From assembly GCA_013265495.1 (NCBI GenBank), contig MU063255.1:928502-992501 (forward strand): a DNA stretch of 64,000 bases, given 5' to 3'. The DNA is from Vicugna vicugna (lineage: Eukaryota). Shown piece after piece: positions 6,663 to 58,318 of this stretch (the stretch's first letter is position 1; the number at the start of each line of letters is the position of its first letter). Below the pieces are notes generated by a model. That model saw nothing but the letters and a program-made list of their open reading frames with translations. It had not been told where the DNA came from and searched no databases. Position numbers and translations under genes: made by a program.

Positions 6663-6783
6663 TGGGGAGGGTATTATGGCTCAGTGGTACAGCACCTGCT
6701 TAGCATGCATGAAGTCCTAGGTTCAACCCCCAGCACTTCCATTAAAAAATAATAATAATAAATAATAATCATTTTTTAAAAAG
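6663..6783 (+). mobile_element. Camelid tRNA-derived SINE (Vic-1-like)
   Basis: tRNA-Ala-like head with A box (tggctcagtgg) and B box (ggttcaacccc), an (AAT)n tail, and TSD gctcactggg at 6653-6662 and 6784-6793. Confidence 0.88.
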
Positions 6784-22053: not shown

Positions 22054-22193
22054 NNNNNNNNNNNNNNNNNNNNNNNNNNNNNNNNNNNNNNNNNNNNNNN
22101 NNNNNNNNNNNNNNNNNNNNNNNNNNNNNNNNNNNNNNNNNNNNNNNNNNNNNNNNNNNNNNNNNNNNNNNNNNNNNNNNNNNNNNNNNNNNN
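22054..22193. other. Assembly gap (140 N)
   Basis: Run of n characters. Confidence 1.
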
Positions 22194-37579: not shown

Positions 37580-37814
37580 CAGTGCCGTCCAATAGAAATA
37601 TAAAGCGAGGCATGAATGAGCACCAAGTGTATAATCGTAAACTTTCCAGGAGGCACATTTAAGTGAGTAAAAAGAAAGAGGCGAAATTAATTTAAACAGT
37701 ATATTTTCTATAACTGAATATACCCATACATCGTCATTTTAACACATAGCACTAATTACACTGCAAGCACGCAGTAGCCATCGTGGCCCATTGGCTACCA
37801 TGTTGGACAGTGTG
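37580..37814 (+). mobile_element. MER33-like hAT-Charlie MITE, internally deleted
   Basis: Termini cagtgccgtccaatagaaatataa...tggctaccatgttggacagtg. Confidence 0.75.
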
Positions 37815-38110
37815 GCCTGGGGGAAGCCAGCCTTTCTTGCTGCTGATGCCCGCTGCTGGATGTACAAATGAGTGCATCTCATAGACTGGGTGGGATGGTA
37901 CAACGAAGCCCCCAGCCTGGGGGTCCTGCTAACCATGATTACATATCCAAATCTGAAGACCCTCATGACATTCCACTCATGTGAGAAATACAGGCTCTTC
38001 CACTGACGCTGTCTCAGGCCAGGAAGTCAACCAGGTCACATCTCTGTCTGAGTTGAAAGTCAAGTCAAAGACTGCCAGAATCCAGAAAAAAGAAAACACA
38101 AATGACCCAC

Positions 38111-38214
38111 ACTATGTCTGTGGGCCTGTTTCTGTTTTGTAGATGAGTTCACAGCGACCAGCTTTATTCTTCCTGCCTAATTTCGACCCTGTCTTTCTTC
38201 CCTTCAGTGTTAAC
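38111..38214 (-). repeat. Perfect 104-bp inverted copy of 39835-39938
   Basis: A base-by-base reverse-complement check shows 104/104 identity. It is flanked by the direct repeat acccacact (38105-38113 and 38217-38225). Confidence 0.97.
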
Positions 38215-39888
38215 CCACCCACACTTCCGCACTTCTTCCCGATGATAATTATGCTCAGAGGCATTCAGCAGCCACGATGAAAGACTCTCCAGGGCCTTTC
38301 GAGTCATTAGGGAGAAAACTGATTGTCTGGTGCATTTTGCAAATTAGTACCAAGCATTTGACATATGCTGGGACCTCCTAGTAAGAAGAACACTCAATTT
38401 GCTAAAAGAAAACTCATTGTGGAACAGTGGGAAGAACATGGATTTTGGAGTCACACTTGGATTTGACTCTTAAATATGTCATTTGCTACGTGACTTTGAG
38501 TTTGAAACTTAATCTCTTGGGACTCAGCTTCCACATCTGAAAAGTATAAATAATCACTCTTAGTTTGCAGGATATTCTTAGTATTAAATGATGATTATTT
38601 ACTCAATGAATATTTAATAAGTACATATTCCACGCCAAGCATTGCAGAAGGTGCCATATATACAACAGGAAACAAGACAGAATCCATCTATTCCTTCGTG
38701 GGGCTTCTAGGGTGGTGGGAAAAACAATATTTTTAAAACCATTAGTGTTTGAAAAGACAACATGGGAGCATGAAGTTGGAAACCTTATGGGGTTGTTCTC
38801 AGGCAGGGCCTCCTGAAGAAGTGATATCAAATAGAGACCATAACAATGAGTAGAAATCACCTGGACCAAGGATTGCACGGAGAGGTGTGGAGGGGGATAG
38901 GGCAGCATTCCAGGCAGACTGCGCATGTGCAAAGACCCCGAGGCAAGAGAGAGCATGATTCATTCAAGGACCTAAAAGCAGTTTGGCCCAGAGCAGAAAG
39001 AGGAAACCAACGGGGCTAGAGATTAATTGACCAGGTCCAGCAGCCTCTCATGAGCCTGAAAGGGTTTAAGCCTACATTAAAAAAAAAAAACAAAAAAAAC
39101 CAGGGAACTACTGACAGATATAAAATAGGAGAGTCATTATTGTATTTTCTGAAACTCTTTCTGGCTACACTGTAAGGCGTGGATTCAGTGATGGTATGAA
39201 GAACAAGGTGAAGGCTATGGCGGGAATAAGGGTGAAATCTGAGGGATTTTAGATACGACATGCGCTAAATGTGTGATGAAGAGGAGGGGATTAATCTAAG
39301 TAACATTTTGGGGAAGAAAAGAGAATTAACCGGATTGCTTTATCTACTTGAGTTGCTCAGTGGCATGTGGCTGGTGGGTTTTGCCTGGCTCTGTGCCATC
39401 CCGAAACAGCCACAGTCCATTCAGGAACGACTTCCTGATGCCCTACTACATGCCACGTGTTGACCTAGGTGCTGAGATACCACGGCAACAAATTCCAGAA
39501 TTCCAGCCCTCGTGGAACTTATAGTCTCTCAGAAATAGGGTCAGGATAATGCATACAAGTAGCTGCCACGTGGCAGGCACCAAAGAGAACTGACTCCCTC
39601 TCCTCTTCCCTTTCCTAATGGTGATGGAAAGAAACCTAATTCCTGTATTTACATTTCCATCACTCTCTATGAAATCACTCTACAAGCTACAGCAACCCTG
39701 CGATTCCATGTGAAAGCTGGATAGTCCCATGGTGTCCTCCACACTCCGTGGGGAGCACTAGGTTTGAATCTTCCTTCCCTTCGTCTCACCTAGCCCTGGT
39801 CCCACATGCTGCCTGTGGTCATTTTCACCGGGACGTTAACACTGAAGGGAAGAAAGACAGGGTCGAAATTAGGCAGGAAGAATAAAGC

Positions 39889-40207
39889 TGGTCGCTGTGA
39901 ACTCATCTACAAAACAGAAACAGGCCCACAGACATAGTAAACAATCTTACGGTTACCAGGGGAATGCGGGTGGGAAGGGATAAATTTGGGAGTTTGATAT
40001 TTACAAATGTTAGTCACTATATATAAAATAGATTAAAAAAAACTTTCTGCTGTATAGCACAGAGAACTGTATTCAATATCTTATAATAACTTTTAATGAA
40101 AAAATATGAAAGCGAATATATGTATGTATATGCATGACTGGGACATTGTGCTGTACACAAGAAATTAACACATTATAACTGACGGTACTTCAATTAAAAT
40201 AAAAAAG
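39889..40207 (+). mobile_element. 5'-truncated L1 3'UTR with poly(A)
   Basis: 'gaactcatctacaaaacagaaacag...gggtgggaagggataaatttggg...gtatagcacagagaactg...acttcaattaaaataaaaaa'. TSD gaataaagc at 39880-39888 and 40208-40216. Confidence 0.9.
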
Positions 40208-41812
40208 GAATAAAGCCAGAACTAGAAGTCAGGGCTTTCTTCTTGCCAAACATGAACTACACACCAGCACCACGCTGGTCCTTTAAACCACAAATCCCCA
40301 GGTATGGCATTATCATCCCCATTTGATGGATGAACACACTGAGTCCTACAAAGCTTTCTGGGATGAGAGGCTGGTCTGTCTGACTTGACGTGGCTAACCT
40401 GTGTTTCCACCTTCGCCCAGATACACGTCAACTGGGAAGGCTCTTAATCCTGAATCTCTTTTCACATCATTTTTACAATCAGGGTTAAAATGTCAATTTT
40501 TCCAGTTTTTCTTTTTTTGGTAGATCAAAACCCATGATATATGTAAAGTGCTTGGGGCACTGAATAATTATCAGTAAATTTTAGCTGCCTTTGCTCCTTC
40601 TATTTCCCTATTAAGAGATAACAGAGCAGCTCCTAAATCTACAAAAAACAAACAAATAAACAAAAAACAAAAAACATTACTCCTGGCTTAAAGATTCTAC
40701 CGGTGCAAAGTATTCTTTCCACTTCTCCATCCGTTTTCATAATCTCATGCCATTCATTCTTGGTCCAGGTTTTTTGGCCTCAGTTCCGTAAGGCCTCTCG
40801 GATCCCACGCTTCTGCCGGCAGATATTCACGGGGAGCCCAGTTCCTCTATTTACAAGCACAGGCCAAGCACTGATGAGAAGTATTTACACGCTACGGGCT
40901 GAGAAACCCACAAGTCCTGACTGCAATGCAGAAAGGGCTGCCTGCAGGGCTGCTGGTTACAGCTGGACGTAAAACCCATTATCAGCTCATTGGCTGCTTG
41001 GACATAAAACTGCTTGGTCCTGCAAAGATATTTCCCCACTGAGGGGATAAGTTTAATAAGAACCACAGATGACAGTAAAAAGCACATTTATTCCCTATAA
41101 CCTACAGAAAGTCTTTATTGCATATAGGATAAATAACAGGGCTCTGTGAAGCATTGGTCAGCAATTCCACAGAGGAGGTTTGGGGGCATAGAACACAGTG
41201 GGGAGAAACTGCTGTTTGAAAATCCAGGCCCCAGAGCTGAAGAGGCAAAGGGAGAAGATGAGCTTTCCTGTGAAAGAGACGACAACCCGCTGTCAGGCAA
41301 TGGTCCAGCACGGCCACACACTCGAGGCATGGGCAGTCTTTCTACTCAGTGGCAGGTGGCCCAAGGCAAGATTACCAAGCAATGAGAACATCATCTTGTC
41401 TAATCATTATTTTCAAAACGACACCATAACCCATCTTTCTACTGCACCCTTACAATCACGTGGGAGAAACACAATGGGGATTCTTATTCCCATTTTACAG
41501 ATGGGGAGACAACATTAACATCAGATGTCCAGGACTGCAGGATGTGCTGCTGTGTCATGCAGAACACGGTCCTTTAAAGACCATGGGCTCTGTGGACCTG
41601 GCTCCTGCCACCCCTCTGACCTCAGTTCCCACGGTGCTGCCTCCTTGCTGTTTCCCCAGTGCTGCCGTGGGCTCCAGCCTCAAAGCCTCCACCCTTGTTC
41701 TTCCCTCCACCTGGAACCATCCTGCAGGCATCAGAATGGCTGCCTCCCTCAACCCCATTCAGATGTCTGCTCCAATATCACTTTCTCAATGATCCTTCTT
41801 GCCTCTGTATTT

Positions 41813-47998: not shown

Positions 47999-48581
47999 TG
48001 TTAGTTTCCTCGGGGCTGCCGTAAGTGGGTACCACAAGCTGGGTGGCTCAAACCATGGCATTCATCATCGCCCAGTTCTGGAAGCCAGAAATCCCAGATC
48101 CAGATGTTGGTAGGGTTGGCTCCTTGTGAGGGCTATGAGGTGAATGTGTTCCAGGCCTCCCCACTAGCTTCTGGTGGTTCGCAGGCAATCCCTTGTATTC
48201 TGTGCATCACTGTGAACTCTGCCTTCATCTTCAACCGGCGGTCTCCCTGTGTGTGTGTGTCCAAATCCCCTTCCCTTTTTTAAACATTTTTTTTAGTGAT
48301 TTTTTTCAGGGGGGAGGTAATTAGGGTTTTTTTTTTAATTATTATTTTTTAATGTAGGTACTGGAGGTTGACCCCAGGACCTTATGCATGCTACCTAAGC
48401 ATGCACTCTACCACTGAGCTATAACCCCCCAGATTTCCCCTTTTTATAAGGACACCAGTCCGACTGGATTGGGGCCTCTCCTAATAATCTTATCTTAACC
48501 AACTACATCAGCAATCTGAGGCACCGGAGGTTAGGATCCCACGTATGAATTTGGAGAGAGAGGGGACAATTCAACCCATAA
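47999..48581 (-). mobile_element. MLT1A/B/C MaLR LTR interrupted by a camelid SINE
   Basis: 'tgttagtttcctcggggctgccgtaag...cagttctggaagccagaaatcc...' resumes after the SINE as 'ttcccctttttataaggacaccagtc...gacaattcaacccataac'. Confidence 0.82.
48281..48430 (-). mobile_element. Camelid tRNA-derived SINE (Vic-1-like, long-tail variant)
   Basis: The reverse complement reads 'ggggggttatagctcagtggtagagtgcatgcttaggtagcatgcataaggtcctggggtcaacctccagtacc...acccTAATTACCTCCCCCC...' followed by an A-rich tail. Confidence 0.88.
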
Positions 48582-58077: not shown

Positions 58078-58318
58078 GATTCCACATATAAATGATATCA
58101 GATGGTGTTTTTCTTTCTCTTTCTGGCTCATTTCACTTAGAACAGTGATCTNNNNNNNNNNNNNNNNNNNNNNNNNNNNNNNNNNNNNNNNNNNNNNNNN
58201 NNNNNNNNNNNNNNNNNNNNNNNNNNNNNNNNNNNNNNNNNNNNNNNNNNNNNNNNNNNNNNNNNNNNNNNNNNNNNNNNNNNNNNNNNNNNNNNNNNNN
58301 NNNNNNNNNNNNNNTCTT
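58078..58318 (-). mobile_element. L1 fragment (ORF2 end, no 3'UTR or poly(A)) with a 16-17-bp TSD, partly in the gap
   Basis: 'gattccacatataaatgatatcagatggtgtttttctttctctttctggctcatttcacttagaa' is the reverse of the L1 ORF2 terminus. TSD tgatcccaggcattcta at 58061-58077 and 58319-58335. Confidence 0.8.
58152..58314. other. Assembly gap (163 N)
   Basis: Run of n characters. Confidence 1.

What the first reader, a model, noticed from the sequence alone, without database searches (positions are those of the whole stretch)
38105..39938. Perfect 104-bp inverted, locally templated insertion with its own target-site duplication
Seen: 38111-38214 is the exact reverse complement (104/104) of 39835-39938, separated by 1,620 nt. 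The donor segment straddles the 5' junction of the older, diverged L1 at 39889 (45 bp of flank, the L1's TSD gaataaagc, and 50 bp of L1). Both arms share the same L1 mutations, so the copy was made long after the L1 inserted. The inserted arm is bracketed by the direct repeat acccacact (38105-38113 and 38217-38225). Its last 3 nt (act) are also the first 3 nt of the template (microhomology), and there are 2 untemplated C's at the other end. There is no poly(A). Established: polymerase-theta end joining and MMBIR/template switching give short inverted insertions templated from nearby DNA with microhomology. Inference: a very recent, possibly polymorphic event. If the region is transcribed it would form a 104-bp perfect dsRNA (ADAR/PKR substrate, back-splicing promoter). 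The insertion also adds two acceptor-like sites on the + strand (ttttgtAG at 38142, cccttcAG at 38207) and an AATAAA on the minus strand.
Basis: partly seen in the sequence, partly recalled or inferred. Interest (0 to 1): 0.7.

Follow-up and report, generated by a model that had tools for sequence, protein, structure and literature searches.

The report
Polymorphic 104-bp inverted templated insertion
A 104-bp piece of non-coding DNA was copied backwards from 1.6 kb downstream into a chromosome break; the copy is real and still varies between animals, but it is an ordinary example of a known kind of DNA-repair scar.

Summary
Bases 38111-38214 are the exact reverse complement (104/104) of 39835-39938. 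This is the only repeat pair of at least 95% identity in the 64-kb window.

It is not an assembly artefact. Short-read contigs from independent public samples of three organism labels reproduce the k=31 unitig pattern expected from the inverted repeat. One of those samples also carries an empty allele, and a fourth sample probably lacks the insertion.

The empty allele keeps the 1.6-kb spacer colinear, so the inversion model is out. The insertion is therefore 109 nt (38114-38222): 101 templated nt (104 counting the ACT microhomology) plus an 8-nt filler, CCACCCAC. Six filler bases re-copy the left flank, so the "9-bp target-site duplication" is only partly new sequence.

There is no poly(A) and no L1 endonuclease site. 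The best reading is a single microhomology-primed template switch during break repair or replication (MMBIR/TMEJ class). That class is known in human germlines, although this event is longer and its template more distant than usual.

Transcription, dsRNA formation and editing were not shown.

The parts
38105..38113 (+). Left copy of the direct repeat ACCCACACT. It is original sequence, and its last 3 nt (ACT, 38111-38113) also match the donor (microhomology).
   Evidence: It is present in both the filled and the empty allele.
38111..38214 (-). Inserted arm: exact reverse complement of 39835-39938. 101 nt are unambiguously templated (38114-38214), plus the 3-nt ACT overlap.
   Evidence: 104/104. 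The arm unitig 38127-38214 is seen in X2, X4 and X5 at about 1.5-2.2x the unique depth.
38114..38222 (+). The 109 nt that are absent from the empty allele, i.e. the true extent of the insertion.
   Evidence: Joint 38113->38223 in X5 (depth 5.7, side 29, both 1). The unitig boundaries 38085, 38252 and 38223 are reproduced only by this join in the simulation.
38215..38222 (+). 8-nt filler CCACCCAC. CC has no assignable template. ACCCAC repeats 38105-38110.
   Evidence: There is no significant template elsewhere; the 8-mer AACCCACC at 39373 (reverse complement) is at chance level.
38223..38225 (+). Second ACT of the ancestral ACTACT. With the filler it completes the apparent right copy of the 9-bp direct repeat (38217-38225).
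38215..39834 (+). 1,620-nt stretch between the arms. It is colinear with the left flank in both alleles, so it is not inverted.
   Evidence: X2 has a 1,680-nt unitig at 38185-39864. In X5 the empty-allele unitig runs from 38085-38113 straight into 38223-38252, and record 28 continues on the + strand.
39835..39938 (+). Donor (template): 45 nt of unique flank, the L1 target-site duplication and the first 50 nt of the L1 fragment.
39880..39888 (+). 5' target-site duplication of the L1 fragment (GAATAAAGC). Its partner lies at 40208-40216.
39889..40206 (+). 5'-truncated L1 3' end with a short A tail. It was inserted before the copy was made.
   Evidence: It is 67-77% identical to four other L1 3' ends in the window. 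The A6 tail and the duplication are seen.

Best explanation
A single germline event inserted 109 nt between the two ACT triplets of an ancestral ...ACCCAC-ACT-ACT-TCCGC... site.

Proposed steps:
1. A 3' end finishing in ...CACACT paired through the 3-nt microhomology ACT/AGT with the + strand at 39936-39938, about 1.7 kb downstream.
2. It was extended accurately for 101 nt, down to 39835. This made a reverse-complement copy of a segment that spans an old L1 5' junction.
3. It then left that template and was rejoined to the other side of the break or fork through an 8-nt filler (CC plus a re-copy of ACCCAC from the left flank).

This is a microhomology-mediated template switch of type '1-4-3-2' in the four-point model. 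It belongs to the MMBIR / synthesis-dependent end-joining class, possibly with a polymerase-theta-type step at the filler junction.

Shown: the structure, the donor-to-copy direction, the empty allele, the unchanged spacer orientation, and polymorphism between samples.

Inferred: which 3' end primed, which polymerase copied, and whether the start was a double-strand break or a stalled fork.

The product is a neutral-looking, non-coding structural polymorphism.
For: - 104/104 inverted identity, and the only repeat of 95% identity or more in 64 kb.
- The donor is in its native context, contiguous with the L1 body, its target-site duplication and unique flank.
- The copy is absent from the empty allele in X5 (joint 38113->38223).
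- The unitig simulation reproduces the X2 record (38185-39864, 1,680 nt) for a homozygous filled genome. It reproduces the X5 records (start 38085; 38185-38252, 68 nt; start 38223) only for filled plus the ACTACT empty allele.
- There is 3-nt microhomology at the left junction. There is no poly(A) and no TTTT/AA site.
- Arm unitig depth is about 1.5-2.2x the unique depth, so there are two copies, not a dispersed repeat.
- Literature: germline inverted templated insertions with junction microhomology number about 100 per human genome at 25 bp or longer (PMC8421209). The four-point model has a type that creates inverted repeats (PMC5453318). Mixed templated and untemplated filler is known for polymerase theta (PMC4912351).
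Against: - The evidence from other animals is Logan k=31 contigs, not reads. The tool marks the empty-allele joint as 'between: not known', and I did not see that contig's letters.
- Only one empty haplotype was observed and there is no outgroup. ACTACT as the ancestral state is therefore inferred from parsimony.
- The right junction has no clear microhomology, so the return step is not explained in detail.
- One predicted boundary is off by 1 nt (38141 observed, 38140 simulated).
- A template 1.6-1.7 kb away and a 101-nt error-free copy lie outside the usual range for polymerase theta (about 10 nt, 85% within 10 bp, errors about 1 in 30; PMC5068794). They also lie outside the 100-bp search radius used to define MMB-TIs.
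Confidence: 0.8

Rival explanations
1. Iterative polymerase-theta end joining (TMEJ) alone.
1. After a break between ACT|ACT, the right end's 3' tail pairs AGT with ACT on the left tail and copies 6 nt (ACCCAC) in trans.
2. It adds 2 untemplated nt.
3. It snaps back on its own resected strand 1.7 kb away and copies 104 nt in cis.
4. It re-anneals to the left tail through ACT/AGT.
For: This accounts for every base of the filled allele starting from the ACTACT empty allele, with no lost bases. The three modes (in trans, untemplated, snap-back in cis) and switching between them are documented (PMC4912351). Snap-back gives reverse-complement inserts (PMC5068794).
Against: The snap-back priming at 39835 would have no terminal base pair: the primer ends ...GTGG, while the template needs ...GGAC. 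The insert is about 10x longer and the template about 100x farther than typical. 101-104 error-free nt are unlikely at the reported in-vivo error rate of about 1 in 30 (PMC5068794).
Confidence: 0.2
2. A staggered break with a true 9-bp target-site duplication, on a haplotype that had a single ACT. The ACTACT empty allele seen in X5 would then be a separate 3-bp indel variant.
For: A perfect 9-bp direct repeat flanks the insert. Triplet copy-number variants are common.
Against: The only empty allele observed is ACTACT. The boundaries predicted for a single-ACT empty allele (38084, 38246, 38217) are not seen. The model needs an independent indel exactly at the insertion point.
Confidence: 0.15
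3. RNA-templated repair. A + strand transcript of the locus served as template for a reverse-transcribing repair polymerase or an L1 reverse transcriptase, primed by ACT/AGU.
For: It would explain the use of + strand sequence in inverted orientation without needing single-stranded + strand DNA. RNA runs hold 5-17% of the stretch's words.
Against: There is no poly(A), no L1 endonuclease site and no splice signature. The RNA word share is about the L1 share of the stretch (318 of 2,801 nt), and L1 words occur genome-wide. Transcription of this locus is therefore unproven.
Confidence: 0.04
4. An assembly artefact, an inversion with staggered breaks, or a dispersed repeat or transposon with terminal inverted repeats.
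For: Perfect identity and an odd structure could suggest a chimera. The two arms bracket 1.6 kb in the way terminal inverted repeats would.
Against: - The inner junction k-mers are present in three independent samples.
- The empty allele is colinear with the spacer.
- Arm depth is about 2 copies.
- There is no duplication outside 38111/39938, and the right arm is an L1 junction in its native context.
Confidence: 0.02

Closest known systems
Germline MMBIR-type templated insertions (MMB-TI; Osia et al. 2021, PMC8421209)
   Same: The insertion is an inverted copy of a nearby template. It has microhomology at a junction, can be multi-part, and occurs as an inherited, sometimes shared, variant without a larger rearrangement.
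   Different: MMB-TIs were searched only with templates within 100 bp and insert lengths up to read length. Here the template is 1.6-1.7 kb away and the insert is 109 nt. The right junction lacks clear microhomology.
Short-range template switch, four-point model type 1-4-3-2 (Loytynoja & Goldman 2017, PMC5453318)
   Same: Switch points ordered 1 (38113), 4 (38223), 3 (39835), 2 (39938) create a new perfect inverted repeat. The event is polymorphic within a lineage.
   Different: Published events are mostly tens of bases within one fork. This one is kilobase-range and carries an 8-nt filler that a single switch-and-return does not explain.
Polymerase-theta-mediated end-joining templated insertions (PMC4912351, PMC5068794)
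   Same: Microhomology priming, reverse-complement (snap-back) inserts, and filler mixing flank-templated with untemplated bases.
   Different: Typical inserts are about 10 nt, primed within about 10 bp of the break, and error-prone. Here the copy is 101-104 error-free nt from 1.7 kb away.
L1-mediated events (retrocopies with target-site duplications; twin priming)
   Same: An apparent short duplication flanks the insert, and part of the copied sequence is L1.
   Different: There is no poly(A) and no TTTT/AA target. The copied unit contains unique flank plus the L1's own target-site duplication, so it was copied from the locus, not from an L1 RNA. Only 6 nt of the flanking repeat are new.

Membership tests
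Templated inverted insertion by template switching (MMB-TI / four-point 1-4-3-2) | The insert is the reverse complement of nearby sequence on the same chromosome. | tested here: met
   104/104, 1,620 nt apart.
Templated inverted insertion by template switching (MMB-TI / four-point 1-4-3-2) | It is a derived state: an allele without the insert exists and the flanks are colinear. | tested here: met
   X5 joint 38113->38223 plus the matching unitig boundaries. This is contig-level evidence, and there is no outgroup.
Templated inverted insertion by template switching (MMB-TI / four-point 1-4-3-2) | Microhomology at the switch junctions. | tested here: inconclusive
   The left junction has 3 nt (ACT). 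The right junction has an 8-nt filler with no clear microhomology.
Templated inverted insertion by template switching (MMB-TI / four-point 1-4-3-2) | Template within about 100 bp (operational limit of MMBSearch). | tested here: not met
   The template is 1.6-1.7 kb away.
Polymerase-theta end joining (TMEJ) templated insertion | A short insert primed close to the break, often with errors. | tested here: not met
   101-104 nt, 1.7 kb away, zero errors, against about 10 nt, 85% within 10 bp and about 1 error per 30 nt (PMC5068794).
Polymerase-theta end joining (TMEJ) templated insertion | Dependence on POLQ. | not testable with these tools
   This needs genetics.
L1 / target-primed reverse transcription insertion | A 3' poly(A) and a TTTT/AA-like target site. 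| tested here: not met
   There is no A-run at either end. The target reads tg|accc on the + strand and aa|agtg on the - strand.
Inversion with staggered breaks | The segment between the inverted duplicates is inverted relative to the ancestral allele. | tested here: not met
   The empty allele links 38113 directly to 38223 and onward in the same orientation.
Assembly chimera | The junctions are absent from independent data. | tested here: not met
   Unitigs starting at 38185 (30 nt of arm plus the junction) occur in X2, X4 and X5. The left-junction unitig 38085-38141 occurs in X5.
DNA transposon with terminal inverted repeats | A target-site duplication outside both arms, and multiple copies. 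| tested here: not met
   There is no repeat flanking 38111/39938. The arms are at two-copy depth. The right arm is an L1 junction in its native context.

The most novel reading that the evidence does not exclude
The two 104-bp arms may evolve in concert. Samples X2 and X4 carry G>C at 38161 on a single unbroken arm unitig. In X4 its depth is about 2.2x the unique depth, which suggests the same derived base sits in both arms (38161 and 39888). That would mean arm-to-arm gene conversion across a 1.6-kb spacer in a repeat only 104 bp long, and the perfect identity would then say little about age. A more remote possibility is that the copy was made from a local + strand transcript.
Probability: 0.12. 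Interest if true: 0.5.

Novelty: new member of a known kind. Interest (0 to 1): 0.3.

Why it matters
This is a clean natural example, resolved to the base, of a kilobase-range inverted templated insertion caught while still segregating. Both alleles can be inferred. Events of this size and distance fall outside the search radius of the tools used to catalogue such scars, so they are probably under-counted.

The empty allele shows that a flanking direct repeat that looks like a target-site duplication can be partly filler copied from the flank. That is a caution for anyone inferring staggered breaks from such repeats.

For the animal itself nothing suggests a function. The locus shows no coding signal, and transcription was not demonstrated.

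Tried and rejected
- Fetching real contigs of other animals through ORF products: ten ORFs around the locus were looked up by exact sequence, and none is in the collection.
- Two scans of JGI metagenome contigs with 22-23-nt flank patterns, hoping for host contamination: no hits.
- Pfam scan of ten ORFs of 110 aa or more between 32.5 and 48 kb, for gene context: no families.
- Rfam: only two tRNA-like hits far from the locus.
- Tandem repeats near the site: nothing relevant.
- A second template for the filler: the 8-mer AACCCACC (reverse complement at 39373) would give a three-microhomology path, but a match of that length is expected by chance about twice in the 8 kb searched. Rejected as evidence.
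The share is also about the L1 fraction of the stretch, so no conclusion on transcription.
- Transposon, twin-priming, inversion and chimera readings were rejected; see the membership tests.

Full report
**Observation**

The repeat finder reports arms 38111-38214 and 39835-39938, 104 nt, 100% complementary, with 1,620 nt between them. A script confirmed exact identity.

A self-BLAST of the whole 64-kb window at 95% identity or more returns this pair and nothing else, so chance is not an issue. The first 54 nt of the donor (45 nt of flank plus the 9-nt L1 target-site duplication) have no other match in the window. The L1 half has only 80-82% matches of 30-40 nt to other L1 3' ends.

The donor sits in its native context:
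- 39889-40206 is a 5'-truncated L1 3' end, 67-77% identical to four other L1 copies in the window.
- It ends in A6.
- It is bracketed by GAATAAAGC at 39880-39888 and 40208-40216.

The copy is flanked by ACCCACACT at 38105-38113 and 38217-38225, with CC at 38215-38216.

**Is it real, and is it fixed?**

Twenty public DNA (or probably-DNA) runs of five coded organism labels hold 81-89% of the sampled words of 37600-40400. I laid the Logan contigs (k=31) of four runs on that stretch: X2 (organism A), X4 (B), X5 (C) and X14 (E).

A perfect inverted repeat collapses in a de Bruijn graph and must cut the contigs in a predictable way, so I simulated the unitigs.

| Genotype simulated | Predicted unitigs | Observed |
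|---|---|---|
| Homozygous filled | Spacer unitig 38185-39864, 1,680 nt | X2 record 10 matches exactly. X4 has the same ends (38185 and 39864) in two pieces. |
| Filled + empty allele joined 38113->38223 | Start at 38085; a 68-nt unitig 38185-38252; a unitig starting at 38223 | X5 records 25, 27 and 28 match. X5 also shows the joint 38113->38223 itself (depth 5.7, 29 nt on the shorter side, 1 ambiguous base). |

The arm unitig 38127-38214 has about 1.5-2.2x the depth of the spacer in all three runs. That fits two copies, not a dispersed family.

X14 has no contig laid anywhere from 37600 to about 39940, although the index says it holds 81% of the words. In all four runs the left-flank contig is missing, presumably removed by the tool's filter. 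The simplest reading is that in X14 the spacer is fused to that filtered contig because the left arm is absent. This is an inference; the tool warns that a hole proves nothing.

The genotypes therefore read:
- X2 (organism A): filled, with no sign of an empty allele.
- X4 (organism B): filled, with no sign of an empty allele.
- X5 (organism C): heterozygous.
- X14 (organism E): probably empty.

- The junctions exist in independent data.
- The spacer is colinear in the empty allele, which runs from 38113 straight into 38223 and onward on the + strand.
- The 104-mer is not a common repeat.

**What the empty allele changes**

The empty allele reads ...AAATGACCCACACT|ACTTCCGC.... The filled allele is that sequence with 38114-38222 (109 nt) placed between the two ACT triplets, and no base is lost.

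The 109 nt consist of:
- 101 nt that can only come from 39835-39935 in reverse complement (104 nt with the ACT overlap);
- the 8 nt CCACCCAC.

Six of those eight bases (ACCCAC) repeat the bases just left of the first ACT. Together with the pre-existing second ACT they make the apparent 9-bp duplication. Only 6 nt are newly duplicated, so a 9-nt staggered break is not needed.

A deletion of the filled allele through its 9-bp or 3-bp direct repeats would give a single ACT, not ACTACT. A random deletion that removes almost exactly the insert is implausible. I therefore take ACTACT as ancestral, with the caveat that only one empty haplotype was seen and no outgroup was available.

**Mechanism**

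There is no poly(A). The target does not resemble TTTT/AA on either strand. The copied unit contains unique flank and the L1's own target-site duplication. L1 retrotransposition and twin priming are therefore out.

The structure is the '1-4-3-2' type of the four-point template-switch model, which creates a new inverted repeat (PMC5453318). It also matches the signature of germline MMBIR-type templated insertions: an inverted copy of a nearby template with junction microhomology, about 100 per human genome at 25 bp or longer (PMC8421209).

My preferred path:
1. A 3' end ...CACACT pairs with AGT at 39936-39938.
2. It is extended accurately to 39835.
3. It is rejoined through a short filler.

A pure polymerase-theta path (in-trans copy of ACCCAC, two untemplated bases, snap-back copy of 104 nt, re-annealing through ACT) reproduces every base from the ACTACT allele and uses documented modes (PMC4912351). 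It has three weaknesses:
- It requires priming at 39835 without a terminal base pair.
- Reported POLQ inserts average about 10 nt.
- 85% of them start within 10 bp of the break, and they carry about one error per 30 nt (PMC5068794).

An error-free 101-nt copy from 1.7 kb away fits a more accurate polymerase on a D-loop or at a fork, perhaps with a theta-type or NHEJ-type final join. Which enzyme acted, and whether the start was a break or a stalled fork, cannot be read from the sequence.

**Age**

The arm has two CpGs. At 1.0-2.2e-9 substitutions per site per year, zero differences between the arms only bound the age to under about 5-11 Myr, so identity alone does not make the event 'very recent'.

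Polymorphism (X5, and probably X14) shows it is not fixed across these labels. Its presence in samples of three labels shows it is not a private de novo event. Introgression between the taxa cannot be excluded, because the labels are coded.

**Transcription and dsRNA**

If transcribed, the arms would pair with about -204 kcal/mol. I found no evidence that they are transcribed:
- RNA runs hold 5-17% of the stretch's words. The L1 fragment is 11% of the stretch, and its words are abundant genome-wide (depths of 1e4-1e5).
- No Pfam family was found in ten nearby ORFs.
- Rfam gives only two distant tRNA-like hits.

The splice-acceptor-like and AATAAA strings are present but are trivial matches.

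**Context in this scan**

Five other first-stage notes on other pieces of the same genome describe candidate locally templated insertions. They are unchecked, and I did not test them. They fit the view that this is a recurrent, known class of mutation rather than a singular oddity.

**Verdict**

The functional speculation is unsupported. It is a new member of a known kind and of modest interest.

Noticed in passing
window 38161 (and its partner 39888): Runs X2 and X4 carry G>C at 38161 on one unbroken 88-nt arm unitig. Depth is 1.48x unique in X2 and 2.2x in X4. Either both arms carry the derived base (arm-to-arm gene conversion), or one branch of a bubble was dropped by the assembler. The window's base at 39888 matches the L1's 3' target-site duplication, so the window state is ancestral.
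   Followed up: partly
window 38141 / 38127: The X5 left-junction unitig ends at 38141, one base beyond the simulated 38140. The arm unitig starts at 38127 in all three runs instead of 38111. This points to extra branches from other L1 copies, or to a variant at 39938 in those animals. It is unresolved.
   Followed up: no
window 37600-38069: No contig of any of the four runs is laid here, although the runs hold the locus. The left-flank contig is probably removed by the tool's human-likeness filter, which hints at a conserved element somewhere upstream on the same contig.
   Followed up: no
window 39950-40231: The L1 3' end attracts contig depths of 1e5. This part of the L1 is shared at 95% or more, over about 50-nt pieces, with very many genomic copies, even though in-window copies are only 67-77% alike over 200-300 nt.
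   Followed up: no
window 39769-39782 / 39844-39857: A 14-nt, 93% complementary inverted repeat brackets the donor's left boundary at 39835 with a 61-nt loop. It could form a hairpin on single-stranded DNA near the point where copying stopped or started. Its relevance is unknown.
   Followed up: no
window 6670-6741 (+) and 48353-48428 (-): Two tRNA-model hits at 36.1 and 29.9 bits. They are probably tRNA-derived SINE heads rather than genes.
   Followed up: no
window 22054-22193 and 58152-58314: Two runs of N (140 and 163 nt).
   Followed up: no
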